Shown here: one piece after another, positions 2,184 through 61,108 of the stretch | Layout of the letters: every line of letters starts with the position of its first letter | Numbering within the stretch: the first letter of the stretch is position 1 | IMG/VR virus record: IMGVR_UViG_3300040801_002079 | Coordinates: 62,001 to 126,000 of that record | Length of the DNA stretch: 64,000 bases | Direction: 5' to 3' (one strand) | Translations under genes and position numbers: made by a program | Notes under the pieces: model-generated | Database searches by the model: none | What the model was told of the DNA's origin: nothing | Seen by the model: only the letters and a program-made list of their open reading frames with translations

Positions 2184-2453
2184 TTATTTTTTATCAAGGT
2201 TTCCTAGACCGGAACCAGCAATTTTACCACCAATGCGTCTTACGACACGATCCACAACAGTTCCTTTGTTAAGGGCATTGACATCACCCAACACTTTATT
2301 GGCACCAAGAAGGAGTTCACGTAATGAATTGATACCAGATTTGGCATTTTTACGTTTACCCTTATGGGTCTTGGATTGATAAGGTGTTCTCATGGGTTTT
2401 GCCTTGTAAGGCTTTCTACCCGTTTTTGCTCTGTATGGAGTTCTCATGCTCAT
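2184..2453 (-). CDS. Small very basic late protein with repeated (M)RTPY motifs
   Basis: TATAAATA at 2459-2466, 5 nt before ATG 2453; Lys/Arg-rich; MRTPY occurs twice. Confidence 0.65.
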   Translation of the reverse strand: MSMRTPYRAKTGRKPYKAKPMRTPYQSKTHKGKRKNAKSGINSLRELLLGANKVLGDVNALNKGTVVDRVVRRIGGKIAGSGLGNLDKK

Positions 2454-3428
2454 GATACTATTTATACGCTGCAAGCAGTTCCTCTAAATTATCGACATCT
2501 ACTGTAGTGTCAAGTGGCTCATAATCCAGAACAAGTTCGTCAATGTACTCCTCATTCACATCTGGAATCTCTTTATACCATGAATCTCCGTGTCTGTGTT
2601 CCATGTCCAGAACGTTAACAACACGTTCCATGAACTGAAAGGCTTCTTCTTCAGTGGATGCACACCACTTGAAGATGGGATAAGGATCAGCGAAAATACC
2701 GCTGCTTTTGTAAAGTGTGAGAGTGACTAGGAACATTGCTCTTCCTTTAATTCGATGATACCCTTATTATACCATTCCAGAAGGAAAGTGTAAAGTTCGG
2801 GGGATGCGGGCACTGATTCCCATCCGGGTTCAAGGTTCATGAACCCCTTATAGTATGACTCTTTATCCTGTGTTACTTCATTGGTCTCACGGTTAATGTA
2901 AATTGGAATAATTGTACCATACCGACGATTTTCAATGATGGGATTGTTGAGCAGAATACAAAGCACTTCAGCTTCAAATCCTGCATAACGTCCCAGTGTT
3001 ACATCCCCACCTTTCTTCCATACACGAAGATTAAGATCGGGGCGACACCACTGCATATAGTTTGCAGCATATAGTTTCTGAAACTTAAACCCCTGCTTCT
3101 TCAGCTTGGAGTAATCACCATTAAAGCGAATGTATCGTTTCTTCATCATGGTAGCATCTATCGTGCTAACATGTGTGCATGGAGTGCACTGCACACGGGA
3201 TAAAAATAGGAGTTTTCCAAAACCGTGATGTAATCAGGTCCATCATCACCGTAACGAACGAGGTAATCATAACGTGAACCTTCACAAGTACGATACGCAT
3301 CCATGATGCAATTTTCACGCGGGTCCAAGAATGAACCAATGTACTTGCACTTGTTGCAATCATGGATGTAATGTGACATGTTCTTTCTCCGTGGATGATG
3401 GAGACATTATAACATAGTTAAAGGGTTA

Positions 3429-3542
3429 GAGCAAGATGGGTGTCGCACCCACATTTTCACTAACTATACTGGGAAACCTCATTATAAGGGTTGCAACCAT
3501 TCCCAGACGCTTCGTTGACTAGTATTGAAGCTTACATTGCTC
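3429..3542 (-). ncRNA. Candidate tRNA-like RNA (cloverleaf with enlarged loops)
   Basis: GAGCAA/UUGCUC closing stem, GCUUC/GAAGC arm, CUGGGAA/UUCCCAG arm, T-arm-like GUGGG-UGCGACA-CCCAU; no standard anticodon loop. Confidence 0.5.
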
Positions 3543-3545
3543 ATT

Positions 3546-3740
3546 GTGAGAGTAACACAGACCTCTCTATGCATTTTAGAATCAGGTAAACGACTGATCC
3601 ACTCTCAGGTGAATAAAAAGGGAAGTGAGGGAAGGGTAGATACCAACCTACCTTAGTTTTCTGATTCGGGTTCCCTGTATGCCTGTGTTCCTCATATGGA
3701 CCATCAAAGCAAGCAGTACAGTGGCATCCCCCACTTCCAA
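3546..3740 (-). ncRNA. Candidate structured RNA downstream of a sigma70 promoter
   Basis: ORF-free; GGAAGUGGGGGA/UUCCCUCACUUCC and UGAGAGU/ACUCUCA stems; promoter TTGACA-17-TATAAT at 3776-3748. Confidence 0.45.
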
Positions 3741-3747
3741 TAAATTC

Positions 3748-3776
3748 ATTATACTAAAATGATAATGGGTTGTCAA
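3748..3776 (-). promoter_or_regulatory. Consensus sigma70 promoter
   Basis: TTGACA (3776-3771), 17 nt spacer, TATAAT (3753-3748). Confidence 0.8.
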
Positions 3777-3924: not shown

Positions 3925-3931
3925 CTTTATT

Positions 3932-6842: not shown

Positions 6843-7612
6843 CACGTTTGTGTGCATTTCTACACTCCGTGGACTATATCACCACCCTCGTCATTAACGT
6901 TAGGGTGCGGGTCGCTCTAGCTGGTCATTAAGGGGACTTTACCCCTCCAGTAGTCTCTGCACCTTCCTAGAGTGTACTCTAGGCTTGGCTCAAGGTTTTC
7001 ATAGTAACCCATACTTTCTTGCCCATTTTCGTGCTCCATTGTCGCTGACATTATATTTCCTTCCTATGGCTAACCATGAAAGGTGATTCATGTCTTGCTT
7101 CAATTCGCCCTTAGTGGGCTTTGTTTTCCCTCTTTGCTGCTGGTATTTTAACTCTTTATACTTACCAGCACATTCTTTCGAACAGGTGTGCTTCTGCTTT
7201 GCCTGTAGAGTTTGAAAACAAATCTCACAGTATGTCGGTTCGGTTACCTTAGAGTTCCCTGAATTCAACCCGTTCCTTTCATAACTTTCGTGTATGAAGG
7301 CACCAGTATCAATCCAGTTATGTATTTTAACATGGTCTCCCCGACTAAGAACAATGAGATTCTCACTCCTGTTATTAGATCGGTTACAATCAAGATGATG
7401 AACAACTTCATTACTTTCTAGCTGTCTACCTAGATTGGATTCCACGACAAGAATGTGTTCGTAAACCCATCCCTTCCAGTTATCACAATCCATACTTGAT
7501 TGATAATCAGGTCTATACAACAACCTGTAACCATTTAAATACCGAACTGTCTTTTTACTTGTATCCATATGACTATTTATATCATATTCGAACCAAAGAT
7601 ACAAGTTTTTTG
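6843..7612 (-). mobile_element. Group I intron (IC3-like) in the tRNA anticodon loop, carrying an HNH gene
   Basis: Inserted after exon U, ends in G; P (GGGTTGAATTCAGGGAACTC), Q (AACCTTGAGCCAAG), R (GTGCAGAGACTA) and S (GATATAGTCC) elements present. Confidence 0.92.
6999..7568 (-). CDS. Intron-encoded HNH homing endonuclease with C-terminal Zn-finger and HTH
   Basis: YEHILV...EVVHHLDCNRSNN..ENL...H...H; CEIC..CSKEC; WLAIGRKYNVSDNGARKW; TATAAATA at 7574-7581. Confidence 0.9.
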   Translation of the reverse strand: MDTSKKTVRYLNGYRLLYRPDYQSSMDCDNWKGWVYEHILVVESNLGRQLESNEVVHHLDCNRSNNRSENLIVLSRGDHVKIHNWIDTGAFIHESYERNGLNSGNSKVTEPTYCEICFQTLQAKQKHTCSKECAGKYKELKYQQQRGKTKPTKGELKQDMNHLSWLAIGRKYNVSDNGARKWARKYGLL

Positions 7613-9513: not shown

Positions 9514-12500
9514 GGTTATCTCCGTGGTTGATGGAGATATTATAACACAACACTAAGTGTTATGCAACGGAACAATCTGCTTCTATTCTATCATCCATTG
9601 ATCGAATTTCAATGTCCCACACTGAGCAATCATGTGCTTCTGCATATTCTTCAGGGGAACCAAAGCGACATTGATCTTCTCTACAATCTCCGTTAAAATT
9701 CCACGGATGATAGTGATCGCAGATTCCACATTCGAAAATGATATGCATGTTTTACTCCTGATCGTCACCATCAGTGCGTTTCATCTTCGGCTTACTAACT
9801 GATGCTTTGGCGGCACCACGAGCAAGACTGCGTGGAATACCACGTTCAATCAGTTGCTTCAGTTTCTTGCGAAAGATCGGCTGGCGCTGATCCCATTCGT
9901 ATTCCGCAGATGCGCGGGGCTGTGCTGTATCTTTCATTTTATTTCCTCAATCGAATTCCAATGTTTTCAAGCGTTTTCTTTTTCCATGCACGAACCGCAT
10001 CTTCGTTCATTCTGCGAGTCGTAACCTGAAAAGGAAAGTTAAGTACACCTTCTTCCTCTGCATTGGACAGGGCTTCCAGAATATCCTCGGCTTCCTGTTC
10101 GTGGCAAACGGTGATGGTCATTTCAATCATGTTCTTTCTCCGTGGTTGATGGAGATATTATAGCACAGTGGATTTAGTTATTCAAGCTTGTCTGGGATTT
10201 CATCCGGGATTTGTTCTAACAGCACTTTCCATCTTCTGAGAAGTCTTCTAAACTTCTGAACGTCAAACTGTCCTTGTGTTATTTCAAATACGATGGGATC
10301 ATTGGTGGGATTCTTTCTTGATTTCATCATACCTTCAACTTGATAAAGTAGTTGGTCTAATTTCTCTATGAGGTAAAATGCCTGTTGCTGTTCTTCTGTG
10401 TACGCCATAGATGTATTTATCGCGCACCTTTACATTTATTCATTATTCATGTCAATTGCTTCATCAATGTCATCAGCATCACCTCTCCAGATGTGACGCA
10501 TGTATCCCACTTCGCTATAATCATTAGCTGGGTGCTCATAATGTCCGTTATCCGTCCAATAAGCAATGCCCAGAATGTCCCACTCTTTTGGAAAGGGGAT
10601 GTGATTACTGTTGCAAAACTTTTCCAAACGGTTCAAATCGAACTTGGTAATGTTACTATATTCTTCTGGAAGGGTATCGGGGTAAGGAATACCATCACCT
10701 CGAACAAGGATTTCACCGAATGTTGAGTGAATGCGGATCATGCATGACCCTCTGCAAACCACGGGCTGGTCATTTCATCAAAACGACCATGACGGGCATG
10801 ATTCTCATACTCGGCTTCAATACCCAGACGGGATTCAAGAGAGTGAGAGAAGAAGTCATGGAAGTACCAGTGATCTTCGTTGATGGAACCAACTTCCTCA
10901 ACCCGCTGGGCAAGACGCTTTGCGGCTTCCAGACCGTCCTTCGACCAACGCATCGCAGAACCGGAGTCCCTGAAGGAAACATTGTGAACCAGAGTGCGAC
11001 CATCTTCCAGATCGGCGCAGACAAACAGGATGGTGTCGAAGTACTGGGTATCTTCGATGAACTCACCCTCTACGACCCAATCGCTGATGTAAACATTGAT
11101 GACCTTGATCCGTGACATTTGTTTGCTCCGTGGGTGTTTCCGATTTATGAGTCTATTATAACACAACCACCGGTAGTGTCAAGGGAGTTTCCCAAGATTT
11201 TCTGTGATATAATCCCACTTCATCTTCTCTGCAATTTCCCTCAACCAGAAGTGGGGGGCTTTACCATCAAGAGCATTGTTCATGTGATCAATCATCTCAG
11301 CGGCAATCCATCCAATATGCTCTTCGGGGGGATACTCACCTTTTTCACCCTCTTCCCGTGCTAACTCACGAAGTGAATCCATTACAAATTCCGGAGTCAG
11401 AAATTCATCGTTTCCTGTGAAGATTTTCATCAGATCAGTACTCCAGTTCAGGAATGTAACCAACGTGGGCTTCCAACTCAGCATAGACCTTCATGTAGTA
11501 GCTGTACTTACGCTGGGCTTCAGCATTGCTGATTTCACCGTCACAGTGCAGGTTCTCGGGGCTGAGGTCACCCTCAAGGTTGTACACGATCTTTTCCGCG
11601 TCATCACGGGAAAGGGGGAACGTCATCAGGGGACGCTTCGACAGTTCATTCCAGAAGTTCAGGCGTTCAACGTAGTTCTTCAGGTTCTGCATTGACTTTC
11701 TCCGTGGTTGATGGAATCATTATACCACAGTCATTCGTCAAAGTAAAACAATGCTCCTGCATAACCATCATCTTCTTCATTTGTGAATGGGCCTGCGCCC
11801 AGCACATGAGTGTGTGGCTTTTGTTTGGAACTGTGCTCGGTATACACAACAAGTTCCCCATCAGCATTGACACCCATTTCAATATCCCACTCACCCAGCG
11901 TCATTTTGATAACTTCCGGCATCAGTCTACTCCGTATGCTTCCTTACATGGCAATACATCAGAAGTGGTTTCTCGTTGACCGTTAAAGGGATTATAAAAG
12001 TGGTCAATTGAATCAAGAAATGAAGAATCTACCCCCATTATACCACCAGATTCATTATCTTTCCATAATTCCAGTTCAACCAGACCCCCGCTTGTGGGGT
12101 CTATGACTTCAACCGTTGTTATAAATGTATAAGGTTTCATCCTGTTCCATGTCCTTCAATCATGCTGTTGCACCCTTTACTTCGGGGGTGAACAATGCGT
12201 CACGATCCCACATCAGTTTGAGTTCTTCAACTTCACTCAGAAACTGATCCCACATCCATCCATCAATCTCAATGATTTCAGGGTTATACAGATTGTCAAT
12301 GTTAACAAACTGGGCATCACCCAAATCACTATCCTCACTACGGAGATACGTCTTACCGTTCTTCGCTTCAAGGATCATGTTCCAGTATCCATTTTCATAC
12401 ACCCCTATGGATACCACACCAAGACACCCGATATTCAGGGTCTTTTCCCTATGGTCAATCATTAAATTTCCCCTTTAAACACTCAATTCCTCTGCGGCTT

Positions 12501-17850: not shown

Positions 17851-18774
17851 TACTAAACGTACTCGTCGTTGTCAAGTGCTTCGTTAATTTCATCGTCAGT
17901 AATGAAGTCACCAGCCTCAATCTCAACAACTTCAGTTGATCCATCTTCCTTCACAACCACAACACTCTTGGGAATGAAATCCTCAGGAACATAGAAGTCA
18001 TCCATCGGCAAATCAACATCGTCTATAATGCGACCAGCCTCTTCGTTCTCGCGTTTACACTCTTCGCATGTGGTTACGATCACATAAGTGCCAGTAACAG
18101 TGTCTAGGACGTTGTACGTGCTCTCATCACTGTTATACCATTCAGCCGGAATATCGTGTGGGCAACTTCCCACATAATGTGTCTGTTCCATGTAAGTCTC
18201 CTATAAATATACTCAAGTAGTATAACACACAAGGGAAACTTACACAATGGGTGAACACCAATTTCTAAAATTGCTTGCCAGAGTTATAAAACTGCACAAA
18301 GATGTCAGAATTTACAACACCGGTTATACCAGATTTGAATATGAACTTACCGAAGCAAATGGGACATTATTTCTAACGGTCCAGTTTCCAAGTCATAACA
18401 ATAAAGTTACCGTATCGTATGAAACCAAACAATACGATAACTTTCTTGAAAAACTGAATGAAGCAGAAGAATACCTTTACGACAAACAGCATTTAACCCG
18501 AAGATATTTTTAAATCTTCTTCGGGAACCCACTCTCTGTCCACTCATCTGAAAACGTAACGTTTGCGTTATCGTCCCAGAGGGAAGTGTACATGTCTCGC
18601 AGGGTTTCCCTCACGCTTTCACGTTCCTCGTCATCAAGGAAGTCTTCAACACCGAGAGGAACCTCAATGTTATAACCGTAGATACCGACACCGGGATCAC
18701 CGTGGCTAATAACGGATGCAGTGAGTTCAGTCATGTTTGTGTCTCCGTGGTTGATGTGTGTATTATATCACACT

Positions 18775-20562: not shown

Positions 20563-21177
20563 CTACTTGGAGTAAATTTTATATCCCTCTGTGCTCTTGT
20601 CGATGTTATATCCCTTGTTCTCAAGCTTGGGAATGCGTTGAAATCCACGGGATGTCTTGGAACCGTGCATGGCAAAGTCCATAATGTTATCATCACTCAG
20701 GTCACCACCACCGAATTCCTTTTCAAAGAACTCAGTGACAGTAGGGTCTTTGCGTTCCAATGCCTTCTTGAATGATGTGAAGATGTCTTTGTTGCGAGTG
20801 ACATGTATATTACGTTTTGCTAATCCATGCATGTTCTTAAGGATTTCATCTTCAACATTGTCCGGGACAACATTCAAAACAAAGCAGGAGAGTCCCACAT
20901 CAAACGTGTCATCAGGGAGTTTATTGGATACGCCTTCCCATCCATCGCAGTCAGTTCCATGGTAGGGATCATAGGTGTATACCTTAACCCCTCTATCACG
21001 CAACCATTTAGCGTTACGCCCCGTTTTACCAGCACCATAGTCCAACACCTTCATTCCATCCGTTATGTCGTTCTGGAGGAACAGGTGGCGTACAGCAGGG
21101 GCTACACCGGCTGAGATGGATGTACCACCCTCTTCAAGTGGTTCACCTTGGTATACTTTTAGGTCTTTGAGTTTCAT
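20563..21177 (-). CDS. Class I SAM-dependent methyltransferase (late, N-terminally tagged)
   Basis: VLDYGAGKTGRNA, YDPY, FD.....FVLNVV; TATAAATA-N5-ATG. Confidence 0.82.
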   Translation of the reverse strand: MKLKDLKVYQGEPLEEGGTSISAGVAPAVRHLFLQNDITDGMKVLDYGAGKTGRNAKWLRDRGVKVYTYDPYHGTDCDGWEGVSNKLPDDTFDVGLSCFVLNVVPDNVEDEILKNMHGLAKRNIHVTRNKDIFTSFKKALERKDPTVTEFFEKEFGGGDLSDDNIMDFAMHGSKTSRGFQRIPKLENKGYNIDKSTEGYKIYSK

Positions 21178-21384
21178 GCATGTATTTATAAATCCGTGAT
21201 CGACACAGTATAGCACAAATTAACTTTGTGTCAAGCTTGATAAATAAAATTACATGTGATAGGATATCAGAATGCGAAATCATAATTTATTACGAAAGGC
21301 TATAACATTGAGAAGTACAGAAACGATTATAAACAAAGAAGGCTTCATTGAGTATGAAGATTGATCCCATCAATCCTTAGTTAC

Positions 21385-21476
21385 GTTGCAGTGGCAGAGT
21401 CTGGTTATGCGCTGGATTGCAAATCCAGTTAGTGCTCGAAAGGGCCACGCGGGTTCAAATCCCGCCTGCAACTCCA
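21385..21476 (+). tRNA. tRNA-Cys(GCA) with an atypical long variable arm
   Basis: GTTGCAG/CTGCAAC acceptor, U73, CCA; CTGGA-TTGCAAA-TCCAG anticodon arm; about 20 nt variable region. Confidence 0.88.
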
Positions 21477-21520
21477 ACCTTCCAAACATACATTATGTTT
21501 CAATTACTATAAATAGTAAT

Positions 21521-21937
21521 ATGAAATATTGTCCAGTTTGTGAAACAACCAAAGAATTATCTGAATTTAATAGAAATAAAGCAAAGAAGAACGGGGTTGC
21601 TTCTACGTGTCGTGAGTGTATGAAAATTTATAGGTCACGATATTACAAGAAAAACAAAGAACTTGTAATGGAGAAGGCATCTAAGCGTCGAATTGAACTT
21701 AAAGAATGGCTTGAAGATTATAAATCTGATAAAAAATGCATTAAATGTGGAATGGATCATCCAGCAACACTAGACTTCCATCATCGTGATGAATCAGAAA
21801 AAGAATTTAGTATTGCTACTGGCATTGGTCAATTGGGTAAAGGAAAACAATCGTTATTGGATGAAATAAATAAGTGTGATATACTATGTTCAAATTGCCA
21901 TAGAATATTACATTACGAAGAACGTAAGCGGGAGTAG
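21521..21937 (+). CDS. Free-standing HNH homing endonuclease
   Basis: CPVC..CREC N-terminal Zn motif; CIKCG....LDFHH...K...EINKCDILCSNCHR.LH; late promoter 21508-21515. Confidence 0.88.
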   Translation: MKYCPVCETTKELSEFNRNKAKKNGVASTCRECMKIYRSRYYKKNKELVMEKASKRRIELKEWLEDYKSDKKCIKCGMDHPATLDFHHRDESEKEFSIATGIGQLGKGKQSLLDEINKCDILCSNCHRILHYEERKRE

Positions 21938-22003
21938 CTCAGTTGGTAGAGCATCGGCCTTCCAAGCCGATTGTCGCGGGTTCGATCCCCGTCTCCCGCT
22001 CCA
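21928..22003 (+). tRNA. tRNA-Gly(TCC)
   Basis: GCGGGAG/CTCCCGC acceptor, TCGGC-CTTCCAA-GCCGA, GGTTCGATCCC, TCCA; 76 nt. Confidence 0.97.
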
Positions 22004-22038: not shown

Positions 22039-25000
22039 ACTTAATCGTTCTTGACAGCAGTTCCGAACAAAAGCTGGGTAAGGATCATCAGACCCCACAT
22101 ATCAACCCAACCAATGCTATTAATCATGGGAAACACATCAATCAAGACATTATTCCACAACCACATAGCGGGCCATGCTAGAAGGAATGACACCACGACT
22201 GCAAAGGCAATCATTCCTAAAAACGCTACAGCAATTTTCATAGACCTCTCCTTACTTGTTTTATTACCCCAATTATAGCAACAACTGCAACGAAAATGCA
22301 AATACCCTGTAAAATTTCCATCTCAACCTCTGGTAGTAGGTTAAAAAGATGCCCACCTCCGTCTCTGGTCCCTGCATACTGGGTTATGGCGTAAACATCA
22401 GGTCAGGACTTTTAGTTTCGATGCAATACCAATTCGATTCTAACGAGGTATGTATGCTTCCCGTTACGTGAAACCAATTTCTTTTCGCTTAAAACCTCCG
22501 TGGCTGATATAGGTGAAGAAAGGGGGTGCGGTTCGCTCCCAGAGGTGCAGTGCGCTCCTCTTCAATTCTCCGCCTAATCTTTAATGTGGTTGAGGTTGTT
22601 TCTTCAGTGTGTATATAGTACTACAAGTCGGATTCCATGTCAACCCTTCGAAGGGCGATTTCCATATCAATTTCCATTCCCTGAACCCACCATTCATCAC
22701 CGTAAGTGCTGTTACCGTCAATGTCCCAGTGTGTCTTTTCATTATTAGGGACAATGGCAGAGCACCCAGAAAGGAATAGGATTGATATAATGATTAGTTT
22801 CTTCATGACAATATTTATTCCACTACCGCAATGTCACCAATGTCATCATCATAGACATTGGAGATACCAGTAAGGGTATATTCATCAACCCATGAGAGTC
22901 CACACTCGTTACACATAATGGACTGCCATGCAATGTTGTTATCAACTTGAATGGAATCACCTTCAAAGTCACATCCCCCACAACGGGGACAGACACTTGA
23001 ATGTTCAAGGTACTTGGAATTTGAGATTGTTTGCACTGATAAAGACCTCTAGCGTATCAATTGCTTTTTGAGCAGAAGTACGATATTTTGAGTGATGGTA
23101 AAATGCACTACCACCTGACAATACATACCTCTCTCGGGTCAAAACATCCTTTGCATCAGAGAGCATAGCAAATATCTCTCGCTCAGTCAAAGACCATGTA
23201 ACATAGTTGCGGGTTTCATCTTCAATAAACCCCAACTCTGGAACACCATCATGAATCAGCAGACTGCTGAACAATGCTGGCAACTGTACTTCATAATATC
23301 TGTTCATACCACTCCCCTTGTGAAAGGATCAGGGGGAGTTTCCTCCCCCGTACCTTACAGGTGGCGACTAATTCTCAATTCTATCGTGTACTGGAACTGC
23401 ACCGTAGAAACGATGACCCAGCATCTTCTCAATTGCGTTACTGAAACGCGAGTCGGAAGTTGCGGCATAGTTTCCACCGAACATCGTCCACTGTCCCTCC
23501 CCCTCAAGAGGAACTAAACGTACACTGTTCAACGGACCCTTTTCCAGTTTGACCGCAGGACAATCATCCTTCGGCTCAAAGGGACCATCGACGTTCACAA
23601 CACAAAGTTCATTGTAGCGATTGGTGACACCGTTGCGGGTGCAATCGTAGGAATCTCGGGTGGTGTAAACGCTAACGATCATTCCCATGTCTCTTCTCCG
23701 TGGTGTGTTTCAGTAGGTATATAGTACCAAAACACACCCTCGAAGTCAAGTCATTGGAGTGAGTTTATAAAACTCCAGTATGGTATCATTGATAATGAAC
23801 CCAGACCCGAACGGTTTGGCTTTTTCAAAATCGTCACGGTCAAAGTAATATTCGTAATACTGTCCATCAAGATCATTACCGTAGATGGAGCAACACCACT
23901 CATCATCAGGATCATCGGGGTTCCATCCATAGTTCTGAGTAGCACATCCGTTTACGTACAGGATATGAGACTGTTCAAGCTGTTCAAAGATATCCATTAC
24001 TGTAATCCCCGTGAACCCATAGGAGCAATCTCCATGACTTCAACATAGTCCTCATTCGGATCATACTGTGACGTACCAGTTTGATCCCCGATTGTGTCCA
24101 GTGCAATACGATCTGCTTCTTCTTCATTAGCAGCATCAATCTCGTATTCACCAGAGACGTAGTAGGTCTTTGACCAATGTACAAGGTAACGTGGCATCAG
24201 TAAAATTTCCTCATGTTACGATGTGATGGGTCCACCGGATTCTTTGGTGGAGGATCAATCCCCAAATCGCAAATTTCACTGCAACCGGGATTACTGAAAT
24301 TGGCATGAATAAAGGGATCAATCTGTGATTCCCTTTCAAACGGACCATACATGGTACAGTCATTTTCTGAGTAAGCGTGTTCGAAGTTACCCAACTGAAG
24401 ATACCATTTACCGTCAGTGGCTTTGAACTTGATACAGGCACGAAGCTGAGACATCACTCTTCCTTCTGAATCTCGTCACAAGCGATTTCAAAATCTTCCA
24501 GTACACTCATACGGGAACGGTTGTACTCTTCCCCGATTCGTCCACAGGCACTTTCAACATCGTTGTAGGTGAAACTGCTGTTCATATAGGCATCCGCAAC
24601 TTCGAATACCTTTTCCATGTAAGTGTGATACGGTGTTCTCATTGTTGCTCCATTATAACATCACGAAACTTGGATTTCCACTCTGTAGAACCAAGGCAGG
24701 CGTGTTGTGCCCACGCATAGACCGGAACTTCTTCTGTATCCAGAGTTCGTCTCCAGATAACTTTCCCGAAGAGCAGGGTTTCTTCAACAAGGTACTGCAT
24801 CTTGTACGGTTCCTCATTAAAAGAACGGGCTAGCACTCGTTTACGAGTCGTGAACATTATTCGTTCTCCCACTTCTCGTAAAGGCGATCACTCATTTCCT
24901 GTACGTCACGATGGTTCACATTCATAATGGCGGCAATGTCACCAGTGGCGTGTGTCAGTGTAACGTAAGAGATGAGTCCATCGAAGTACAGAGAAGTGAC

Positions 25001-25792: not shown

Positions 25793-26067
25793 TCATATAG
25801 TATCAAATCCCTGTGTCCGTGTCAACCCATGGGGAATCAGAAAAGTGAATTGCGAAATCTTCAGACAGTATATGGTTACCGTCTCTGTCCCAATACACAC
25901 GGTATATAACATGGAAGAGACCGCAACGGCGCAACTCACGTACTCGGAATATATGATAGTGCTCACCCTCTTCAGGAACGTAGGAAGCGGCATATTCCTC
26001 AACGGTTTGATTTCCCAGATCAATAAACATGATGACATTATATCATGAAAAAAGTACTACCGAAAGC

Positions 26068-38059: not shown

Positions 38060-39097
38060 ATGGTAGAAGAAGCCTACGTCTATCTGTGGAGAGATTCTGT
38101 AAACAAGAAATTCTATCTTGGGTATCATAAAGGATCACCTGATGATAACTATGCCCATTCATCATCGGTTATGGAATCCTTTAAAATGAATTCTGTCCCT
38201 AATGGGTATAAACGTAGAATACTTGCGTTTGGATCAAGGGAAGAGATGTTAGCACTTGAGGAAACTCTGCTTAAGAATAGAAAGGAACGAGGTCGGTGGC
38301 ATAAGTATCATAATATGAAGACATGCTCATTTCCTTATCTCTGGGATGATCCTGAGTATCGTGAGAAGATGAAAGCGTTATGGGATGATCCTGAGTTTTA
38401 TAAGATGAGGTCTGAAGAAACATCCGCTAGACTTAAAGAAATGTGGAAGGACCCTGAGTATCAGAAAATGCAGTCGGAACTGATGTCAGCTAGAAATAAA
38501 GAGTGGTGGGATGACCCTGAGTATCGTGAGAAGATGGCAAAAATGATGTCGATTCGAAGCAAGGAGTGGTGGAATGACCCTGAGTATCGTGAGAAGATAT
38601 GTGCCGCATTGAAAGCGGCATGGGATGATCCTGAGTATCGTGAGAAAATGGCTGAGATTATGTCAGTTCGTGTTAAAGAACTATGGAAAGACCCTGAATA
38701 TCGTGAGAAGATGGCTGAGATTATGTCAGTTCGAAGCAAGGAGTGGTGGAATGACCCTGAGTACAGACAGATGAAATCTGAAAGTATGTCGATCCTACAC
38801 AAAGAACTATGGAAAGACCCTGAATATCAGAAGAAAATGTCTAAGAAGCGAAAGGCTATGTGGAAAAACCCCGAGTATCTAAAAAAACAAGCTGAAAATA
38901 TGGCAGTTCGAAGTAAAGAACTATGGAAAGACCCTGAATATCGTGAGAATATTTCTAAAAAAATGAAAAAAAAATGGGAAGACCCTGAGTATCGTAAAAA
39001 GATGCGGGCTATTTGTACGGTGTGCGGGCACGAATCTCAAAAATCAGTAATAACACGATACCATAACGATAACTGTAAGTTTAAGAACAAACAATAA
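38060..39097 (+). CDS. GIY-YIG (Seg-like) endonuclease with 12 tandem W.DPEY repeats
   Basis: YVYLW......KFYLGYH.G...D.Y..SS N-terminal domain; repeat array; C-terminal CTVCG...RYHNDNCK. Confidence 0.85.
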   Translation: MVEEAYVYLWRDSVNKKFYLGYHKGSPDDNYAHSSSVMESFKMNSVPNGYKRRILAFGSREEMLALEETLLKNRKERGRWHKYHNMKTCSFPYLWDDPEYREKMKALWDDPEFYKMRSEETSARLKEMWKDPEYQKMQSELMSARNKEWWDDPEYREKMAKMMSIRSKEWWNDPEYREKICAALKAAWDDPEYREKMAEIMSVRVKELWKDPEYREKMAEIMSVRSKEWWNDPEYRQMKSESMSILHKELWKDPEYQKKMSKKRKAMWKNPEYLKKQAENMAVRSKELWKDPEYRENISKKMKKKWEDPEYRKKMRAICTVCGHESQKSVITRYHNDNCKFKNKQ

Positions 39098-39298
39098 ATA
39101 CATGTATGAACGATTGTGTAACATATGATGATTTGTTTCGAATATTGCAGTGGGTTGTGGTAATTATCACAATCATGTTTATAGCATATACCGGTCAATT
39201 AAAAAAACTTACTTCCAACTCATGGGTAAAACCCATTATCATTGGTGTCATCATCATTGTTCTTTCCGAGGTCATCATACGAGCAGTGGGGGCATGAT

Positions 39299-43372: not shown

Positions 43373-44532
43373 CTATTGTTTAAAAATACAATTCATGATA
43401 TAATGTTTCCATGAAGCATGAAGATGAACGAAGCATTAATGGCTGGACTCCTACCACTCGCCCATGGATTGTGTGTGCTGCAAATCGATATGGCGATACA
43501 ATCATCACTGGTGCACGACATCATGACAACATCATGAGAGCAGCGGTGGCAGCAATTGGTGGGTCATTTGATGCACAGGATCATGATGCATGGAAACGAG
43601 GTCATAGTGTATTGATGAGTCGTGTTCCGGAAGGTGGGCGTGAGGAGCAGGGGTTCATTGATCAATTTGGTCGGTTCTATGATCGGGAAGAAGCCATGCA
43701 ACTGGCTCTTCAAAATGATCAGGTTAATAACCATAAGGGCGAACGTTTTTTATGCAGTGAACACTTGTATTGATTAACAATGATGTGGTAGACTACGACA
43801 ATGAAAAAACTTATTATATTATTGACACTTTTAGTGCTTACAGGTTGTAAAATGGATTTAGAAGTTGAAGACCCCGCCATCGTGAAGTGTACAGATTTTC
43901 GTGATAACGAGGTTTGGCATTTTGATAATCGAACAGCCCGTGATGGAGTAATGCATATGAGCGGTGAGGCGACATATATCGTTACTGATACCAATGGAAA
44001 TAAAAGAGAAATGCGTCACCCCCTTCCTGATTACCTTAAATGTGATATTCACGAGGAACTAAAGTGATTACTTTAAATTCAAAAAACATTTTTGTCGATT
44101 TTGCACTACGAAACAGCATAACAGATAATTGGAAGCAGCCCCGAGACATCTGCTCCTTATTTAATAAGTTTGTAAAATCCTTTTTTGCTTGTTGTTTTGC
44201 CTATGGATTACTGATAATGTCAGTAGTATCTGCTTTATTTGTATTATTGGTGGGCACCCATATGTATTTTACAACTGACAGTCTTAATGTTTTACAAGAT
44301 ATTCAACGTGGGGTATACAACATGTTTACCATGTTTATGCTATGGGGAATAGGGTCATTATTTTTTATCTTTGCAATTGGTTTGATGATGGCTTATTCGG
44401 CAATAGAAGACTTATATAGAGCCACTTTTCGCCCTAAAAACAAATCGAATAACATGTTTAAAGAATGGGTTAAAGCAAAGCGAGATAAATTATGCCCACT
44501 TGTAGAATACAAATAGGATATTAAAAGAGAAA

Positions 44533-53212: not shown

Positions 53213-53248
53213 GTTGACACCTGATACGTCATACCGTATAATGGCGGT

Positions 53249-54055
53249 ATGACTACACATAGAGAACAATTTTTAAATCAATGCGCCTGTATTGATTTTG
53301 AAACAACGAGCTTAGAACCCGAAGAAGCTGAAATCATTGAGCAAGGCATAAGTGTATACGAAGATGGGAACTGGACTGTGGCAACTTCTATGTTGCACGA
53401 CTGTAAAGCTCCAGATGTTCCAGCCGAAGCATCCGCTGTAAACAACATTACGAAGCCAATGCTAAAAGGTTACGGCCCATTCAGTCTTGATAATTTCGGA
53501 TTATTATCTATAAAGCCTCATAGGAATATATTAATTTCACATAATGTCAAATATGACAGCATGGTATTAAAGAACTATGTTGATCCCGAGACATTTGAAG
53601 CACTTTCTTCTAATTGGCTATGCAGCTATCGTATGGCTAAAAAGTTATATGTTAATCGTCCCGAGTATAAATCATTAAGCCTTGCCTATCTACGGTACAG
53701 GCGCAAGCTATGTGAATTTGTTAAAATTCCAACCGAGCCTCACAGAGCGGGATATGATTCGTACATCAATGGCCTTCTTTTGGAGGACATTATCGACATA
53801 TTAGAAGAGGCTAATATATTGGATAAGGATAAACCATACTTTGGACAACTAAAAGATTGGCTGAAGCCACCTATAATGTTGGAATACATGCCCGGATTTG
53901 GTAAACATGCTGGGGAACGGTTGGACGAACTTGATTTCGGCTATTTGAAATGGGTGTTCGAAAATACCGACAGATGTGATGAGGATAGTCCCGAGTATGA
54001 TATTGATCTGGCAACTACATTAGCTGGATATATGGCAAAAGCTTATAAGGGTTGA
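53249..54055 (+). CDS. DnaQ-like DEDDh 3'-5' exonuclease (ExoX-like)
   Basis: IDFETT, SHNVKYD, HRAGYD; C-terminal FGKHAG......GYLKW. Confidence 0.88.
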   Translation: MTTHREQFLNQCACIDFETTSLEPEEAEIIEQGISVYEDGNWTVATSMLHDCKAPDVPAEASAVNNITKPMLKGYGPFSLDNFGLLSIKPHRNILISHNVKYDSMVLKNYVDPETFEALSSNWLCSYRMAKKLYVNRPEYKSLSLAYLRYRRKLCEFVKIPTEPHRAGYDSYINGLLLEDIIDILEEANILDKDKPYFGQLKDWLKPPIMLEYMPGFGKHAGERLDELDFGYLKWVFENTDRCDEDSPEYDIDLATTLAGYMAKAYKG

Positions 54056-54391: not shown

Positions 54392-54437
54392 ACATATTGG
54401 ACTTCTGATAAATATAATCAGAAAGAGGAGTCTTTAT

Positions 54438-55715: not shown

Positions 55716-57443
55716 TGGAAATTAGTAAAGATATTTTAAATAGTGTGCTTGAAAATGGTGAATATGAAGCAATAATAGAAAAAAATCTTCATAGTGGACC
55801 CCATTATAGTATGGTATTCGAAATGGATGATAAACTGTATAAGGCTTATTATATAGAGGGGTCACATGGACCCCGTTGGTTATCACCCAAACCTTCAAGC
55901 GAAACGGCTGAATGCACTGAGGTTGTACGAAAGGAAGAAACTCGTATCGTAATTGGATACGTTGATGTACACGAGGAACCCTCTACTACACCCATGTCAT
56001 TGGATTATTATCTATAGGTATTAGCCGTTAGTTCTCTAGCTACCGATTGGTGGCATGGATAAGTATGAAAAGAAATGGAGGATAGTCATGAGCGAAAACT
56101 ATCAGAAAACGATACGTGAGCTTAATGCAACCATCGAAGAATTACAGTACAGATTGTCCCATTGTGTTGAGTTATTAAAGACTGCCAAGTGTCCATCAGG
56201 GTGTAATGGTAAATGCACATGGTGTTATGAGAGAGAAATAGAGGTCAGAGCACATTAATGAAAAGTGATTGCAAATTAAGCACAGATTTTTATCTGGGAC
56301 TTGTCAGTTTAGAAAAATATAAAGATGCTAAATCCACGGCAATGGCTAGATTTGGTATAAAAAAGAGTAAACGAGTTCATTATAATGATGTTATGGACGA
56401 AGTAATCAAGATATTAATAGAATATAATGCTGTAACATTCGAAGATGAATTCACCCTTGAATAAAAATAATGAGATAAATATGACCGTGTACTCACAAAT
56501 GATTAAAGAATTGGATACGATTATCAATTCAAGTGAGCGTACAGAACTGGAAAAGGACTTGGCTGAGACCTTGAAGCTGAGTATTAATTATATTAAGGAT
56601 ATGAAAAATGATTATAAAGTGTGACCTTTGTGGTAAAAAGACAACCCAGATAAATTCCCCCGCCAGTATGTTGAAAGATGTTGAAAACCTTGATGGCATG
56701 TGTAACGATTGCATGGAGCGAATGAATGTCGCTTTAAAGGAAGCCAGAGTTGTGGCCCATAAAGTCATCAGTGATGCGATGGTCGCAGAAGCTGAAAAAA
56801 TAAGGAATGAGCAGTGAAAACCAGCATTCTTTATCTACTGTTAAGTGTTTTCTTCATTTTAACATGGTTGGGATTTTATAATTCCTACGCTATGAAAGAA
56901 GAAATTAACGGCCTGAATGCCTCACTTGGAAACCTGTTTGCAGATTATTGTAAAGACCATGGCGGTGTTACTATTGTAAAAGATGTGCAGATTTACTTAC
57001 CTGATATTAAAAATAAGGAAGACCTTACGATGGCCTCATGCCGAGATGGAGACTATTACGGGATTCTTCTCATTAATAAGCACACACAAAAAGTTATCTA
57101 TTACATAACCGAGGATTAATATGCAAGGATTTATAACAGGAACCATACTTGGCGTAGCCGGGGGCATCATAGGATCATATCTATTTTTTAAATTCGTAAT
57201 TGCTCCCAAACTTCTCAACATTCAAATAGCTTATAATAATTTAAGAGTAGCTTCTACCGCACTTTTTAAAGACAGTTCAGTTTTACTGGCGTTTCAAAAT
57301 GTATTTGCACAGAGATTAATTGACGTTGAGGAAAAGCTGGACATAGAAAGCTTAACACCCGAAGATTACAAAGCCATTCAATATGATGTTATCGCATCTA
57401 TTGAATCTTATGCAAAAGAACCGGACTTTTAATAAATAATATT

Positions 57444-57674
57444 ATGAAACTACACGAAGTATGCAAAGATGCATTGGATAAACCAACACCGACTCTTGAT
57501 GATTTGGTAAAAAAGTATGACCTTTCAAAAGAGGAACTTCAATCTCAGCTTGACATGGGCATTGAAGTAGAATTTGAGCACACATCGGATAAAAAGGTAG
57601 CTAAGGAGATTGCATTAGATCATCTAGCCGAAGACCCAAAATATTACGATAAACTCAAAAAAGTTGAAGAATAG
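57444..57674 (+). CDS. DUF5661-like late protein
   Basis: QL.MGIEVE.EHT.D...A.EIALDHL.EDP.YY.KL; AATAAATA-N5-ATG. Confidence 0.75.
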   Translation: MKLHEVCKDALDKPTPTLDDLVKKYDLSKEELQSQLDMGIEVEFEHTSDKKVAKEIALDHLAEDPKYYDKLKKVEE

Positions 57675-59004
57675 TTTGCATCTCACCTCCTAATATTGTA
57701 TAATTAGTCCAAATAATGTTGATACTGTCTATAGTTCTAGCATTACTAAGCTGTTCAGTAACAACGTATGTACTTTTTAAAGATCGCTCATCCTTTGTGA
57801 GCAGAGAATCAAGTACAACCAATAAAGTCCTTATAATTTTAAGTGTAACGCTCATAATTATAACATTATTGGTCTACCTTTTGGAGAAATTTGGATGATG
57901 TTTTTACAAATCGGAATTTATGTATTGATTGCCATAGTAACCTCCCTTCTGATTGCCGCATATGATGGTGGACAGCGATGGGGAGCCGGAACGTGTTTAT
58001 TTTTGGGAGCAACATGGCCCATATCCCTTTCCATTATGCTGTGGATTGTAATTCGTAGAAAAATAGGGGGAAGATAATGATTTATAATGTTCCAAAAAAT
58101 ATGAAAGTAGAGGAAACACACAAGGTTTGTGAACACCACAAGAAGCATCCCGATGATGTATCTTATCCCGGATGCACATGCTACCACTCTTGGACGGCAA
58201 AGTTTGACATTCCACTTCCAACATATTATGGTGTATCATTATGCATGTAAAAGAATTTAACATTATAACCGACTACACCAAAACTGGCACCATAGAGTGT
58301 GAGGACGGCACAATTGCCGTGGCTAATAATCTTTCATGCGGAGTATGTGGTGACGATACCGAATTTGAGCCTCTCATATCGGATGGAAACAACTGGCACT
58401 GTGTTAAATGTTGGACTGATGCTGGTCACGAGCCTCCAACTGAAGGCACCAAGATGCGATTGAATGAAGCTAAAATGACCACACGAATGAATTGCCTTAT
58501 CAGGAATATGTGATGAGATACGCAGTTATAGCAACCATCATAACCATAGCATTAACTGTTATGCTTGCCGTAACGTTTTTAAGCTTTATGACCAGCTATA
58601 ACAATGATAGTGCTTCAATACGCGATATCATAGGGAATGGTATGCTATTCCTTTCCTTTTTGATATCATCTTGCATCATTGTTCAAATATTCTTTGTGTG
58701 GGTTTTCTCCAATCAAGTTGAGAAACTGAAGAGTATTTTGGATACCAAAAATAAAGAAATTAGTGCCTTGCGCGGTGAAGTAAAGCGAGTGAAGGAAGAC
58801 GTAGACTTGCTGCTATGAAAAATCTAATGAATTTCATCGATGATTATATTCTAACATCGTGGCATTTCTTTGTAGCAGTCTCGCTGGGTACAATTTTCGG
58901 CTTAGAAAACGTAATACCCATATATTCTCTTATCTGGCTTATGTTATTCGGGGCAGCATCTTTTCTATTTTTATTCAAGTATCGTAAAATGTATAAATAC
59001 TCAC

Positions 59005-59469
59005 ATGAAACTCAAAGACATCAAAAAGCCAGAAAAGCGTAACCCCGTAGCTAAAAATATGGGCATTAATAAAGCTTCTACTCATAAAGATAAGAAGAAA
59101 GCCCAAAGAACTCCTCGTAAGAACCAAAAGCATAAAGGTAAAATGTTTGAATCCTTTATAGTTCTTTGTGAGGAAGCTAAGGTTTGGACAAAAGATGAAA
59201 TCAAAGAAAAGCTTAAAACAGATGACCGATGGCTTATTCGTGCACTATTAGCAATCTACAACAAGCAAACAGAGGATGAGCAGGCAAATGACATGACTGC
59301 ACATTATAATAATGTTGGATTTAACGGTCTAGATGCTGAATGGCTTTCAAAGATGGCTAGGTTTTACAAAGATCGTGGGTTCCTATCGCCTAAGCAATTA
59401 ATGCACGTTCGTAAAAAAATGCTAAAATATTCAGGCCAACTGGCTAAGATCGCAAATAAAAAGATTTGA
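59005..59469 (+). CDS. Late protein with a basic N-terminal peptide fused to a conserved QT.DEQ...N.VGF..D...LS.KQ domain
   Basis: TATAAATA-N5-ATG; NPVAKN...HKDKKK; MFESF linker. Confidence 0.7.
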   Translation: MKLKDIKKPEKRNPVAKNMGINKASTHKDKKKAQRTPRKNQKHKGKMFESFIVLCEEAKVWTKDEIKEKLKTDDRWLIRALLAIYNKQTEDEQANDMTAHYNNVGFNGLDAEWLSKMARFYKDRGFLSPKQLMHVRKKMLKYSGQLAKIANKKI

Positions 59470-61108
59470 TTTCCTAAGATTATCGTAGTATAATTGTGCC
59501 ATGAATAAATGGCATGATGACATAACCCCCTCCGACCTAACATTCACAGGTATGAATACGACTGAATTTGCTCGTAGCTCCCTGCTTACCCGACTGTTAA
59601 GCGATCTATCAAATCGTAAAATATCACTTGGTGTATCGCATGGGACAGTGGTTGATACCTTTTCTGTATTGACTCAAAATGAAGATGTGCCAAACATTAT
59701 AGAACATTTAATGGTTGATATGCTTGCCACTTTAATTTGTGAAAATCCCAAATTTATAGAGGATTATATTGAAGCAAATATCGGCAGAAAATTGCAGAAG
59801 GCGGCGTTAGAAGAAATTGCAGGGAAGTTTGAGATAGATGATCTGAAAAAAGAACCCCCTTTTCCCTTTAATTCACCATGGTCCAATGAGCTTAATAAAT
59901 TAAAAAATGAACAATTTAATTTTTGGTGGGATTATGAAGATGATGAGGTTGTCATATTTGCGGAATATGCGGGCATAGATGGTGAAATATGTCGAATATT
60001 TTTCGAGGATGAATATGAACAACAGGATGCTGAGAATGAAGCTGAACGCATCATACAGAAATTATATAATGATGAAGTAAACATCGGAGATTTCATTAAG
60101 TCCGATCAATCTTTAATATTAGTCGATGATTTGCCAGAATATATTAAGAGTTGGATTAATCGCTCTAGTACGATGTTTTCATCAGGATCAGATGATTATT
60201 TGGTGTGGGATTCTACTAATGCATCATCTTATTCTAAATTAACTGCCGTTACTACCTCAGCAACAGGATATACTAAATGGTGGAACCCATGATAGGCTCA
60301 GAATATATTTGTGAAATACATGGTAAGTATATACAAGAGGGTGAATCAAAGGAATGCCCTGTTTGTGAATATTACAAGTACACCAATTTCCCGGAAGAAT
60401 ATGAGTGGGATGAAGAGGAAGACTAAATGTACATGAAAGAAGTTTTTAGAGTGTTCGATATTGTCATTGAAGACTGTCCCGCCCATCTGAGCCTGACTCA
60501 AGCTGTGTGGGCTGCGCATAATCACCTTCAGACAATAGATGGTGCATCGGTTGAGTGGTCTCCTTCTACCCCATCTACAATACGTTTACGATTTGAGGAA
60601 CATGTTAGTGCCCACAATGTGATGCTTGATATTATAGATGAACTATCATCAATGGGTTATAAATAGTTGTATGATTGATTTTGATTTCAAATTCAGATGG
60701 TTCAGGCTACTATATGTTGGCGTTATTTCGGCAACCATATTTTTCTTTTATGGGTGGATTCCAGCCGCGTTATGTATGCTTACCGTTATAGATATTAATT
60801 TTGATGAAGACCTATTTAAAGTTGAATCTTCCGATGAAGATGATTTAGTCGATTTATTAAATGAAGATGATCGGGGATACGGACCCAACTCGTAATGGTT
60901 TTTACTCAACTGCTCTTACTTTCCGTTCTTATAATGTTAGTAGGAGCACTAGCCCCATTAGGACTTTTTCATTTATTACCAGCCGCTTTTAGTAATATCT
61001 TAGGTTTTGTAGGAATAATGACCATATCCATTGGACTTATAGTTTATGGTGTGTTATTATATGCTTCAACATTGCAGATTTTATTTAAGAGATTAGGTTG
61101 GATAAAAA

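What the first reader, a model, noticed from the sequence alone, without database searches (positions are those of the whole stretch)
2453..60673. Exact NATAAATA-N5-ATG spacing in nine genes predicts systematic leaderless late mRNAs
Seen: the late box ends exactly 5 nt before the ATG at 2453-, 7568-, 10408-, 21177-, 21521+, 39106+, 57444+, 59005+ and 60671+, with no room for a Shine-Dalgarno. Known: the T4 late box occupies about -13 to -6, so +1 would fall on the A of ATG. Other late genes here (18247, 41482, 46825, 51893, 54438) have longer leaders with an RBS. Inference: there are two classes of late mRNA, and the leaderless class could be translated by 70S ribosomes when normal initiation is impaired.
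Basis: partly seen in the sequence, partly recalled or inferred. Interest (0 to 1): 0.78.

Follow-up and report, generated by a model that had tools for sequence, protein, structure and literature searches.

The report
Late promoters fused to start codons
In this uncultivated T4-related jumbo phage about a third of the T4-type late promoters, and several ordinary early promoters, sit exactly where transcription should begin on the A of the ATG, so these genes are predicted, not yet shown, to be expressed from mRNAs with no leader and no ribosome-binding site.

Summary
Shuffles predict 0.37. No other short spacing is enriched. The window is bases 62001-126000 of a 316.8 kb metagenomic jumbo-phage contig that carries T4-like genes. 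Over 147 kb of it, 15 of 75 boxes are fused to gene starts this way. Every fused site has a pyrimidine at -1, none has a Shine-Dalgarno, and independent JGI gene calls use the same ATGs. The geometry matches T4 P23, where the box spans -13 to -6 and +1 is the sixth base after it. T4 itself (100 kb) and 708 kb of more distant relatives show no spike. Close relatives do: TerS-like orthologues keep N5/N6 with different spacers, and one relative has TerL itself at N5. The reading needs widening. Sigma-70-type promoters are fused to ATGs the same way (TATAAT-N6-ATG), also in cultured Xanthomonas phage XacN1. So leaderless expression is a lineage habit, not a late-only device. The 70S "impaired initiation" idea is untested. 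Gating of translation by the promoter fits the gene context better. No RNA data exist.

The parts
2459..2466 (-). TATAAATA box, 5 nt before ATG 2453. The last TA of the box plus G forms the TAG stop of upstream ORF 2458-2736.
2184..2453 (-). Predicted leaderless late gene, 89 aa, very basic protein, no family match.
7574..7581 (-). TATAAATA box, N5 before ATG 7568.
6999..7568 (-). Predicted leaderless late gene, 189 aa HNH endonuclease (PF13392, phrog_15471).
10414..10421 (-). GATAAATA box, N5 before ATG 10408.
10178..10408 (-). Predicted leaderless late gene, 76 aa, no family match.
21183..21190 (-). TATAAATA box, N5 before ATG 21177.
20563..21177 (-). Predicted leaderless late gene, 204 aa SAM-methyltransferase-like (phrog_14016). 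Its N-terminus lines up with the start of the family profile.
21508..21515 (+). TATAAATA box, N5 before ATG 21521.
21521..21937 (+). Predicted leaderless late gene, 138 aa HNH endonuclease (phrog_2255), lying between tRNA-Cys and tRNA-Gly.
22812..22819 (-). AATAAATA box, N5 before ATG 22806.
22621..22806 (-). Predicted leaderless late gene, 61 aa lipoprotein-like (MKKLIIISILFLSGC).
39093..39100 (+). AATAAATA box, N5 before ATG 39106. It contains the TAA stop of upstream ORF 38060-39097.
39106..39297 (+). Predicted leaderless late gene, 63 aa small membrane protein.
57431..57438 (+). AATAAATA box, N5 before ATG 57444.
57444..57674 (+). Predicted leaderless late gene, 76 aa, DUF5661.
58992..58999 (+). 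TATAAATA box, N5 before ATG 59005.
59005..59469 (+). Predicted leaderless late gene, 154 aa, DUF7230 plus phrog_21015. JGI calls the same start.
60658..60665 (+). TATAAATA box, N5 before ATG 60671. The box end plus G forms the TAG stop of the upstream gene.
60671..60895 (+). Predicted leaderless late gene, 74 aa membrane protein. JGI calls this ATG, not the upstream in-frame ATG at 60638.
53214..54055 (+). Sigma-70-type promoter TTGACA-17-TATAAT-N6 fused to ATG 53249 of a 268 aa exonuclease (predicted leaderless early gene).
59466..60292 (+). TTGATT-17-TATAAT-N6 fused to ATG 59501 (263 aa). JGI calls the same start.
1797..2197 (-). TTGATA-17-TATAGT-N6 fused to ATG 2162 (121 aa).
43399..43773 (+). 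TGaTATAAT-N6 fused to ATG 43411 (120 aa).
25803..26042 (-). TGaTATAAT-N6 fused to ATG 26030 (75 aa).
18202..18249 (+). Example of the leadered late class: TATAAATA, then a 37 nt leader with an SD-like AAGGGA, then ATG 18247. Others precede 41482, 46825, 51893 and 54438.

Best explanation
NATAAATA is the T4-type late promoter of this T4-related jumbo phage. At 10 genes in the window (15 in the 147 kb I could read, plus 2 at N6) the box sits so that RNA polymerase with the phage late sigma should start on the A of the ATG. That would give mRNAs with a 5'-terminal AUG and no leader, translated by the leaderless pathway in which the ribosome recognises the 5' AUG. The same fusion is used with host-type sigma-70 promoters (TATAAT-N6-ATG), so leaderless expression is a general habit of this phage lineage and probably suits a host that translates leaderless mRNAs well. 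Most fused late genes lie directly behind co-directional genes inside blocks full of early promoters. The likely consequence (inferred) is that the AUG is translatable only on transcripts that begin at its own promoter. On read-through early transcripts it is an internal AUG without an SD. The fusion would thus gate translation in time and also save space. Shown: the motif, the exact spacing, the statistics, the absence of SD, conservation of the arrangement in relatives, and the match to T4 geometry. Inferred: the transcription start, translation of the leaderless mRNAs, late timing, and the gating.
For: Spike at N5: 10/26 boxes in the window and 17/75 in 147 kb, 15 of them opening ORFs of at least 45 aa. 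No other spacing from N0 to N16 exceeds 2. P is about 1.7e-12. T4 P23 structure: adenines at -12, -9, -8, so the box is -13..-6 and +1 is the sixth base after it. All 15 fused sites have a pyrimidine at -1 and A at +1. In 34 leadered boxes the sixth base after the box is a purine in 29. There is no -35 conservation upstream of 52 gene-proximal boxes. The box is a conserved element in front of virion and packaging genes. The 976 aa phrog_211 protein has box, about 20 nt and GGAG in all 17 relatives, and tail-fibre-like, TerS-like and TerL genes also carry it. Orthologues keep the fusion while the spacer changes: TerS-like is N6, N6, N5 and CTAAATA-N5 in four phages. TerL is at N5 in L102. GIY-YIG genes are at N5 in L117 and L119. 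Negative controls: T4 1-100 kb has 0/34 boxes at N4-N7, and 708 kb of Thg1-bearing relatives have 3/412. JGI's independent gene calls start at the fused ATGs. The fused genes encode 14 mutually unrelated proteins, so this is not a duplicated cassette. About 76% of the genes predicted by my own heuristic ORF caller (its start choice favoured SD and promoter-fused starts) have an SD, and about 24 of 55 SD-less genes carry a -10 element at the leaderless distance. Sigma-70 promoters at exactly N6 number 5, with none at N3-5 or N7-9. XacN1 has them at annotated CDS starts and T4 has none. XacN1 also has (N)TAAATA at N5/N6 before ORF353, ORF323, ORF335, ORF150 and ORF117. Its host genus Xanthomonas has 14% leaderless mRNAs. 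Context: 11 of 17 sites have a co-directional ORF ending 4-27 nt upstream, and strong early promoters with few terminators lie in the same blocks.
Against: There are no RNA data. Metatranscriptomes of the source sample hold none of the sequence, so neither the start site nor the late timing is shown. No gp55, gp33 or gp45 homologue was detected in the 147 kb read (tblastn with T4 gp55 and gp45), and 170 kb of the contig was not examined. The host is unknown. Stop codons of upstream genes lie 4-11 nt from many of the ATGs, so termination-reinitiation could translate them from polycistronic mRNAs without any leaderless transcript. One or two N5 hits are not gene starts (170862-, and the 9-codon ORF before TerL).
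Confidence: 0.68

Rival explanations
1. Compaction plus translational coupling. The boxes are late promoters or merely AT-rich gene ends, but the SD-less ATGs are translated mainly by ribosomes that terminate at the upstream stop a few nucleotides away and reinitiate on polycistronic mRNAs. Leaderless transcripts would then be irrelevant or absent.
For: 11 of 17 sites have a co-directional ORF ending 4-27 nt before the ATG. In 8 of them the stop codon lies in or abuts the box.
Against: The stop-to-start distance varies (4, 5, 8, 9, 11, 16, 18, 24, 27 nt) while the box-to-start distance is fixed. Six sites have no upstream ORF ending within 100 nt (83521, 121005, 207707, 136055, 83177, 69568). 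The pyrimidine at -1 in 15/15 and the same fixed spacing for sigma-70 -10 elements are promoter features, not coupling features.
Confidence: 0.15
2. One reading: the leaderless class exists so that late proteins can be made by 70S or specialised ribosomes when canonical initiation is impaired late in infection.
For: None from the sequence. From general knowledge, leaderless mRNAs can be bound by 70S ribosomes and are kasugamycin-tolerant in E. coli.
Against: The virion and packaging genes whose starts were examined keep an SD-type motif, with or without a box. These are the major head protein, the 976 aa phrog_211 protein (box plus GGAG in all relatives) and TerL in this phage. Tail-fibre-like genes carry only weak GGGA-type motifs. 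Late canonical initiation is therefore evidently expected to work. Early sigma-70 promoters are fused to ATGs in the same way, so the device is not tied to the late period.
Confidence: 0.08
3. Start-codon misassignment. The real starts are elsewhere and the N5 ATGs are incidental.
For: Small ORFs of unknown function are hard to annotate. Two sites have weak downstream alternatives.
Against: 13 of 15 have no in-frame SD-led alternative. JGI calls the same starts. Family profiles align from the N-terminus for the methyltransferase, both HNH genes, DUF7230 and DUF5661. Chance cannot give 10 sites.
Confidence: 0.04
4. The box-ATG unit is a mobile minimal expression cassette spread by recombination, and its abundance reflects shuffling rather than selection for leaderless expression.
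For: Many fused genes are small accessory ORFs or homing endonucleases in hyperplastic regions. Orthologues flip between fused and leadered states.
Against: This does not conflict with leaderless expression, since the cassette would still have to work. The flanks and the spacers share no sequence, and the proteins are unrelated.
Confidence: 0.05

Closest known systems
Bacteriophage T4 late promoters (gp55/gp33/gp45-dependent, TATAAATA at -13..-6)
   Same: Same 8 bp element (here NATAAATA), no conserved -35, placed before virion and packaging genes, with a purine at the sixth base after the box.
   Different: In T4 (first 100 kb) none of 34 boxes has an ATG 4-7 nt downstream. T4 late mRNAs have leaders with an SD. 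Here about 30% of gene-proximal boxes are fused to the start codon. The late sigma was not found in the part of this genome that was read.
Leaderless mRNAs of bacteria and archaea (lambda cI from PRM; Deinococcus, Mycobacterium, Xanthomonas), and the genomic signature of a -10 box at a fixed short distance from start codons used by GeneMarkS-2
   Same: A -10-type element 5-6 nt before an ATG, no SD, ATG rather than GTG/TTG, pyrimidine at -1.
   Different: The fused promoters include a phage-specific late class, not only the housekeeping sigma. The phenomenon is concentrated in one phage lineage while most of its genes keep strong SDs.
T4 translational gating of e (lysozyme), soc and I-TevI by RBS-sequestering hairpins that late promoters bypass
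   Same: Genes lie inside early transcription units and their protein should appear only from the late-promoter transcript. Homing endonucleases and small membrane proteins are among them in both cases.
   Different: No hairpin is needed here. The proposed discrimination is 5'-terminal AUG against an internal SD-less AUG. This is an analogy of function, and it is untested.
Xanthomonas jumbo phage XacN1 (AP018399)
   Same: Syntenic RNA ligase-rIIB-rIIA-Thg1 block (rIIA 34% identical). Sigma-70 promoters are fused to annotated CDS starts, and (N)TAAATA sits at N5/N6 before five annotated CDS.
   Different: Distant (about 50% GC, low identity). Its late box appears shorter, and the arrangement was not found discussed in the literature searched.
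Poxvirus late promoters (TAAATG) - from general knowledge
   Same: The late promoter core overlaps the initiator ATG.
   Different: A eukaryotic virus with its own polymerase. Its transcripts acquire a poly(A) leader by slippage. There is no evolutionary relation.

Membership tests
T4-type late promoter | Conserved 8 bp TATAAATA-like -10 element | tested here: met
   TATAAATA occurs 11 times against 3.46 expected. There are 75 ATAAATA boxes in 147 kb. The first base is not conserved, giving NATAAATA.
T4-type late promoter | No conserved -35 element | tested here: met
   Information is at most 0.25 bit at every position from -52 to -13 in 52 gene-proximal boxes.
T4-type late promoter | Precedes virion, packaging and other late genes, conserved among relatives | tested here: met
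   Tail-fibre-like paralogues, TerS-like, TerL and the 976 aa phrog_211 protein carry it, the last in all 17 relatives. In XacN1 it precedes baseplate and structural genes.
T4-type late promoter | Phage encodes the late sigma gp55 with gp33 and the sliding clamp gp45 | tested here: inconclusive
   A gp44/62-like clamp loader, gp32, UvsX/Y/W and gp41 are present. tblastn with T4 gp55 and gp45 found nothing in 147 kb. 170 kb of the contig was not read.
T4-type late promoter | Transcription starts at the sixth base after the box, late in infection and dependent on replication | not testable with these tools
   No RNA covers the phage. Indirect support comes from pyrimidine at -1 and purine at +1 at that position.
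Leaderless mRNA | -10 element at a fixed distance that places +1 on the start codon | tested here: met
   N5 for the late box and N6 for TATAAT. Both have sharp peaks with empty neighbouring spacings.
Leaderless mRNA | AUG start codon and no Shine-Dalgarno | tested here: met
   All are ATG. The GTG sites at N5 are two marginal ORFs. There is no SD motif upstream.
Leaderless mRNA | Mapped primary 5' end on or within a few nt of the AUG, and protein made from it | not testable with these tools
   No transcript or proteome data exist for this uncultivated phage.

The most novel reading that the evidence does not exclude
Promoter-start-codon fusion is used by a lineage of T4-related jumbo phages as a structure-free temporal switch. 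An SD-less AUG is translated only when it is the 5' end of the RNA. A gene buried in an early operon would then be silent on read-through transcripts and expressed only when its own late (or early) promoter fires. The state flips easily in evolution between fused and leadered, even for essential genes such as terminase.
Probability: 0.35. Interest if true: 0.8.

Novelty: new variant of a known kind. Interest (0 to 1): 0.62.

Why it matters
T4-type late transcription is a textbook system, and its mRNAs are thought of as leadered. A lineage in which roughly a third of late promoters abut the start codon would show that phage sigma-directed transcription can be coupled directly to leaderless translation. 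It would also offer a very compact way to restrict translation to one promoter's transcripts. Practically, it bears on gene calling in jumbo-phage metagenomes, because SD-based start prediction will misplace these starts. It may hint at the host, since leaderless-tolerant hosts such as xanthomonads fit. It is also directly testable, because XacN1 is cultured and shows the same signature.

Tried and rejected
RNA evidence: the look-up of sequencing runs found only DNA runs of a microbial-mat metagenome that hold the sequence. The three metatranscriptomes of the same sample gave zero coverage when laid on 57300-61000.

Near-identical phage genomes: none in the phage collection.

Relatives of window genes: single-protein scans of IMG/VR with three window proteins returned only the source contig. 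L011 and L012 were too distant and AT-rich to be informative.

gp55 and gp45: tblastn with the T4 proteins against everything fetched found nothing. Pfam and PHROG scans of unannotated neighbours of gp32 and the clamp loader did not reveal a sigma.

Whole-genome histogram: only 147 of 317 kb could be reached by walking. Two look-ups were lost to a coordinate slip on minus-strand genes.

Duplicated cassette: the idea that the fused genes are one duplicated cassette was rejected, because all-against-all BLASTP gave no hits.

MKL N-termini: the idea that they mark one function (for example a capsid-targeting signal) was not pursued. One relative's MKLNEITRRAFL looks like a Tat signal.

Literature: no paper holds both 'leaderless' and 'TATAAATA'. 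phiKZ and AR9 transcriptome papers report no leaderless phage transcripts.


Full report
WHAT THE WINDOW IS

The window carries rIIA (29756-32227, minus strand), rIIB (28545-29759-), T4-type RNA ligase 1 (13852-14985-), a Thg1-like enzyme (61109-61837+), an ArdC-like protein, an exonuclease, three tRNAs and about a hundred small ORFs. It has no close DNA match among sequenced phages. Its rIIA is 34% identical to that of Xanthomonas jumbo phage XacN1, which has the same RNA ligase-rIIB-rIIA-Thg1 neighbourhood.

The window is bases 62001-126000 of a 316,801 bp viral contig from a microbial-mat metagenome (IMGVR_UViG_3300040801_002079). By walking along the contig I read 62001-209290. The added part holds gp32, UvsX, UvsY, UvsW, a gp44/62-like clamp loader, a gp41-like helicase and a gp31-like co-chaperonin. 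It also holds terminase, the major head protein, a 976 aa phrog_211 virion protein and four tail-fibre-like paralogues. This is a T4-related jumbo phage.

THE OBSERVATION

All nine sites are as described, and there is a tenth at 22806-.
- ATAAATA-N5-ATG occurs 10 times against 0.37 expected from shuffles.
- The window has 26 ATAAATA boxes. Ten have ATG at exactly N5 and no other spacing exceeds 3. Binomial P is about 2e-10.
- Every such ATG opens an ORF of 61-204 aa and none has a Shine-Dalgarno motif.
- In the 147 kb, 17 of 75 boxes have ATG at N5 and 15 of these open ORFs of at least 45 aa. Spacings N0-N16 otherwise hold at most 2. A broad hump at N17-N30 corresponds to ordinary leaders with GGAG-type motifs.
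- Two more genes, a TerS-like gene and a 183 aa neighbour of gp32, sit at N6.
- JGI's own gene calls, made without regard to this motif, start at the fused ATGs wherever I could see them: window 59005 and 60671, contig 129378, 136055 (a 1540 aa protein), 147497 and 182393.
- For 13 of 15 sites there is no in-frame downstream start with an SD.
- The 14 proteins compared are unrelated to each other.
- They include two HNH endonucleases, a methyltransferase, a lipoprotein, two small membrane proteins, DUF5661 and DUF7230.

IS THE BOX A LATE PROMOTER, AND WHERE WOULD IT START?

Four lines of evidence bear on this.
- The sequence equals the T4 late consensus. Upstream of 52 gene-proximal boxes no position from -52 to -13 carries more than 0.25 bit, so there is no -35 element, as in T4.
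- Boxes precede tail-fibre-like genes, TerS-like, TerL and the 976 aa virion protein. For that protein the box, a leader of about 20 nt and GGAG are conserved in all 17 relatives at 35-73% protein identity.
- In the T4 P23 open complex the flipped adenines are at -12, -9 and -8 (PMC7892883). That fixes TATAAATA at -13..-6 and +1 at the sixth base after it, which is the A of the ATG at N5 sites.
- All 15 fused sites have a pyrimidine at -1. In 34 leadered boxes the sixth base after the box is a purine in 29. This is the usual start-site preference.

What I could not show: a gp55, gp33 or gp45 homologue (170 kb unread), or any transcript.

CONTROLS AND RELATIVES

- T4 (first 100 kb) has 34 ATAAATA boxes and none with an ATG at N4-N7.
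- Eighty metagenomic loci encoding Thg1 relatives (708 kb, 412 boxes) have only 3 N5 gene starts. The spike is therefore not a property of the motif or of T4-like phages in general.
- Closer relatives, found with a conserved structural protein, do share it.
- The TerS-like orthologues read CATAAATA-gattcc-ATG here, CATAAATA-atactt-ATG in L101, AATAAATA-gatat-ATG in L103 and CTAAATA-gcgat-ATG in L102. More distant relatives have 20-25 nt leaders.
- TerL is fused at N5 in L102. In this phage and in L103, a 9- or 12-codon ORF starts at N5 and overlaps the TerL ATG, which has its own SD in this phage.
- The 183 aa gene is at N6, N4 or N6 in three lineages and leadered in others. GIY-YIG endonucleases in L117 and L119 are both at N5.

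The fusion is thus maintained while the spacer sequence drifts. It is gained and lost among orthologues, and it is tolerated by essential genes.

NOT ONLY LATE

- Complete sigma-70-type promoters (-35, 16-18 nt, -10) lie with the ATG exactly 6 nt after the -10 at five genes. These include a perfect TTGACA-17-TATAAT before the exonuclease at 53249. There are none at N3-5 or N7-9, and a second peak falls at N26-27.
- Two more have an extended -10 (43411, 26030).
- XacN1 shows the same at annotated CDS starts (ORF097, ORF110, ORF132, ORF153). T4 shows none.
- In XacN1 the shorter box (N)TAAATA precedes 16 annotated CDS in a structural region. It is at N5/N6 before ORF353, ORF323 (baseplate wedge) and ORF335, and before ORF150 and ORF117 elsewhere.
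- XacN1's host genus has 14% leaderless mRNAs and no clear SD consensus (PMC3300014).
- By my own heuristic ORF caller, whose start choice favoured SD and promoter-fused starts, about 76% of predicted genes in this phage have an SD, and about 10% have a promoter at the leaderless distance.

HOW IT MOST LIKELY WORKS

Shown: the geometry, the statistics, the lack of SD and the conservation.

Inferred: late-sigma holoenzyme starts on the A, and the 5'-terminal AUG is used for initiation, as established for leaderless mRNAs in E. coli (Brock et al. 2008, cited).

Further inference: 11 of 17 fused genes follow a co-directional ORF that ends 4-27 nt upstream, and the box often contains that ORF's stop codon. 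The surrounding blocks hold many consensus early promoters and few terminators. Early read-through RNAs will therefore carry these AUGs internally and without an SD. Translation should then depend on initiation at the gene's own promoter. This would do without RNA structure what T4 does for e and I-TevI with RBS-sequestering hairpins (PMC3014915). Homing endonucleases and small membrane proteins are among the genes here as well.

The virion and packaging genes whose starts were examined keep an SD-type motif, weak in the tail-fibre-like genes, and early promoters are fused in the same way.

The main rival is termination-reinitiation on polycistronic RNAs. It cannot explain a fixed box-to-ATG distance with variable stop-to-ATG distances, the six sites without an upstream ORF ending within 100 nt, or the pyrimidine at -1. 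It may still add to expression.

NOVELTY

Leaderless mRNAs and T4-type late promoters are each well known. I found no paper combining them. Published phage start-site maps that mention the point (phiKZ, AR9) report no leaderless phage mRNAs. I rate this a new variant of a known kind. It is well supported as a sequence pattern and unproven as transcription and translation. It is testable in the cultured relative XacN1.

Noticed in passing
window 53214-53251, 59466-59503, 43396-43413, 26028-26045 (-), 2160-2197 (-): Sigma-70-type promoters whose -10 hexamer ends exactly 6 nt before the ATG of real ORFs (exonuclease, 263 aa, 120 aa, 75 aa, 121 aa). They predict leaderless early mRNAs. XacN1 has the same at annotated CDS starts and T4 has none.
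   Followed up: yes
L014:7718-7747 (contig about 191575, minus strand), with L103 and L102: At the TerL late promoter, a 9-codon ORF starts at N5 and overlaps the TerL ATG. L103 has a 12-codon equivalent, and in L102 TerL itself starts at N5. This may be a leaderless upstream ORF coupled to terminase translation.
   Followed up: partly
window 21177-, 57444+, 59005+; contig 129378, 147497; L051, L039, L101, L119: Several unrelated fused proteins begin MKL[KNHDSF][DETL][ILV] (ATGAAACT...). It is unclear whether this is a targeting signal, a preference of leaderless translation or chance.
   Followed up: partly
window 21385-22003: A plus-strand HNH endonuclease gene with its own late box sits between tRNA-Cys and tRNA-Gly inside a minus-strand gene block. 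This recalls T4 segB in the tRNA cluster.
   Followed up: no
window about 36400-36640: Transcription direction switches from minus to plus, and G+C drops from 43-47% to 36-39% across this point.
   Followed up: no
window 2458-2466, 39093-39100, 57431-57438, 60658-60666 and others: The late box doubles as the stop codon of the upstream gene (TAA inside ATAAATA, or TA plus G). A stop lies in or next to the box at 8 of 17 fused sites.
   Followed up: yes
window 41711-43372: A 553 aa protein has a short Peptidase_M66 (zinc metalloprotease) motif match. Its function is unknown.
   Followed up: no
L007:422-5044 (contig 131433-136055, minus strand): A 1540 aa protein with no family match starts at a GATAAATA-N5-ATG site. 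It is the largest predicted leaderless gene.
   Followed up: no
L010:13533-20343 (contig about 172-179 kb): Four tandem paralogues share an N-terminal phrog_15511 domain and are followed by a tail-fibre-assembly-like gene. Two carry late boxes with 20-36 nt leaders.
   Followed up: partly
L124 (XacN1 190001-240000) and L004: In XacN1, (N)TAAATA precedes 16 annotated CDS of the baseplate and structural region. Three start at N5/N6 (ORF353, ORF323, ORF335). This is a cultured system in which the prediction can be tested.
   Followed up: partly
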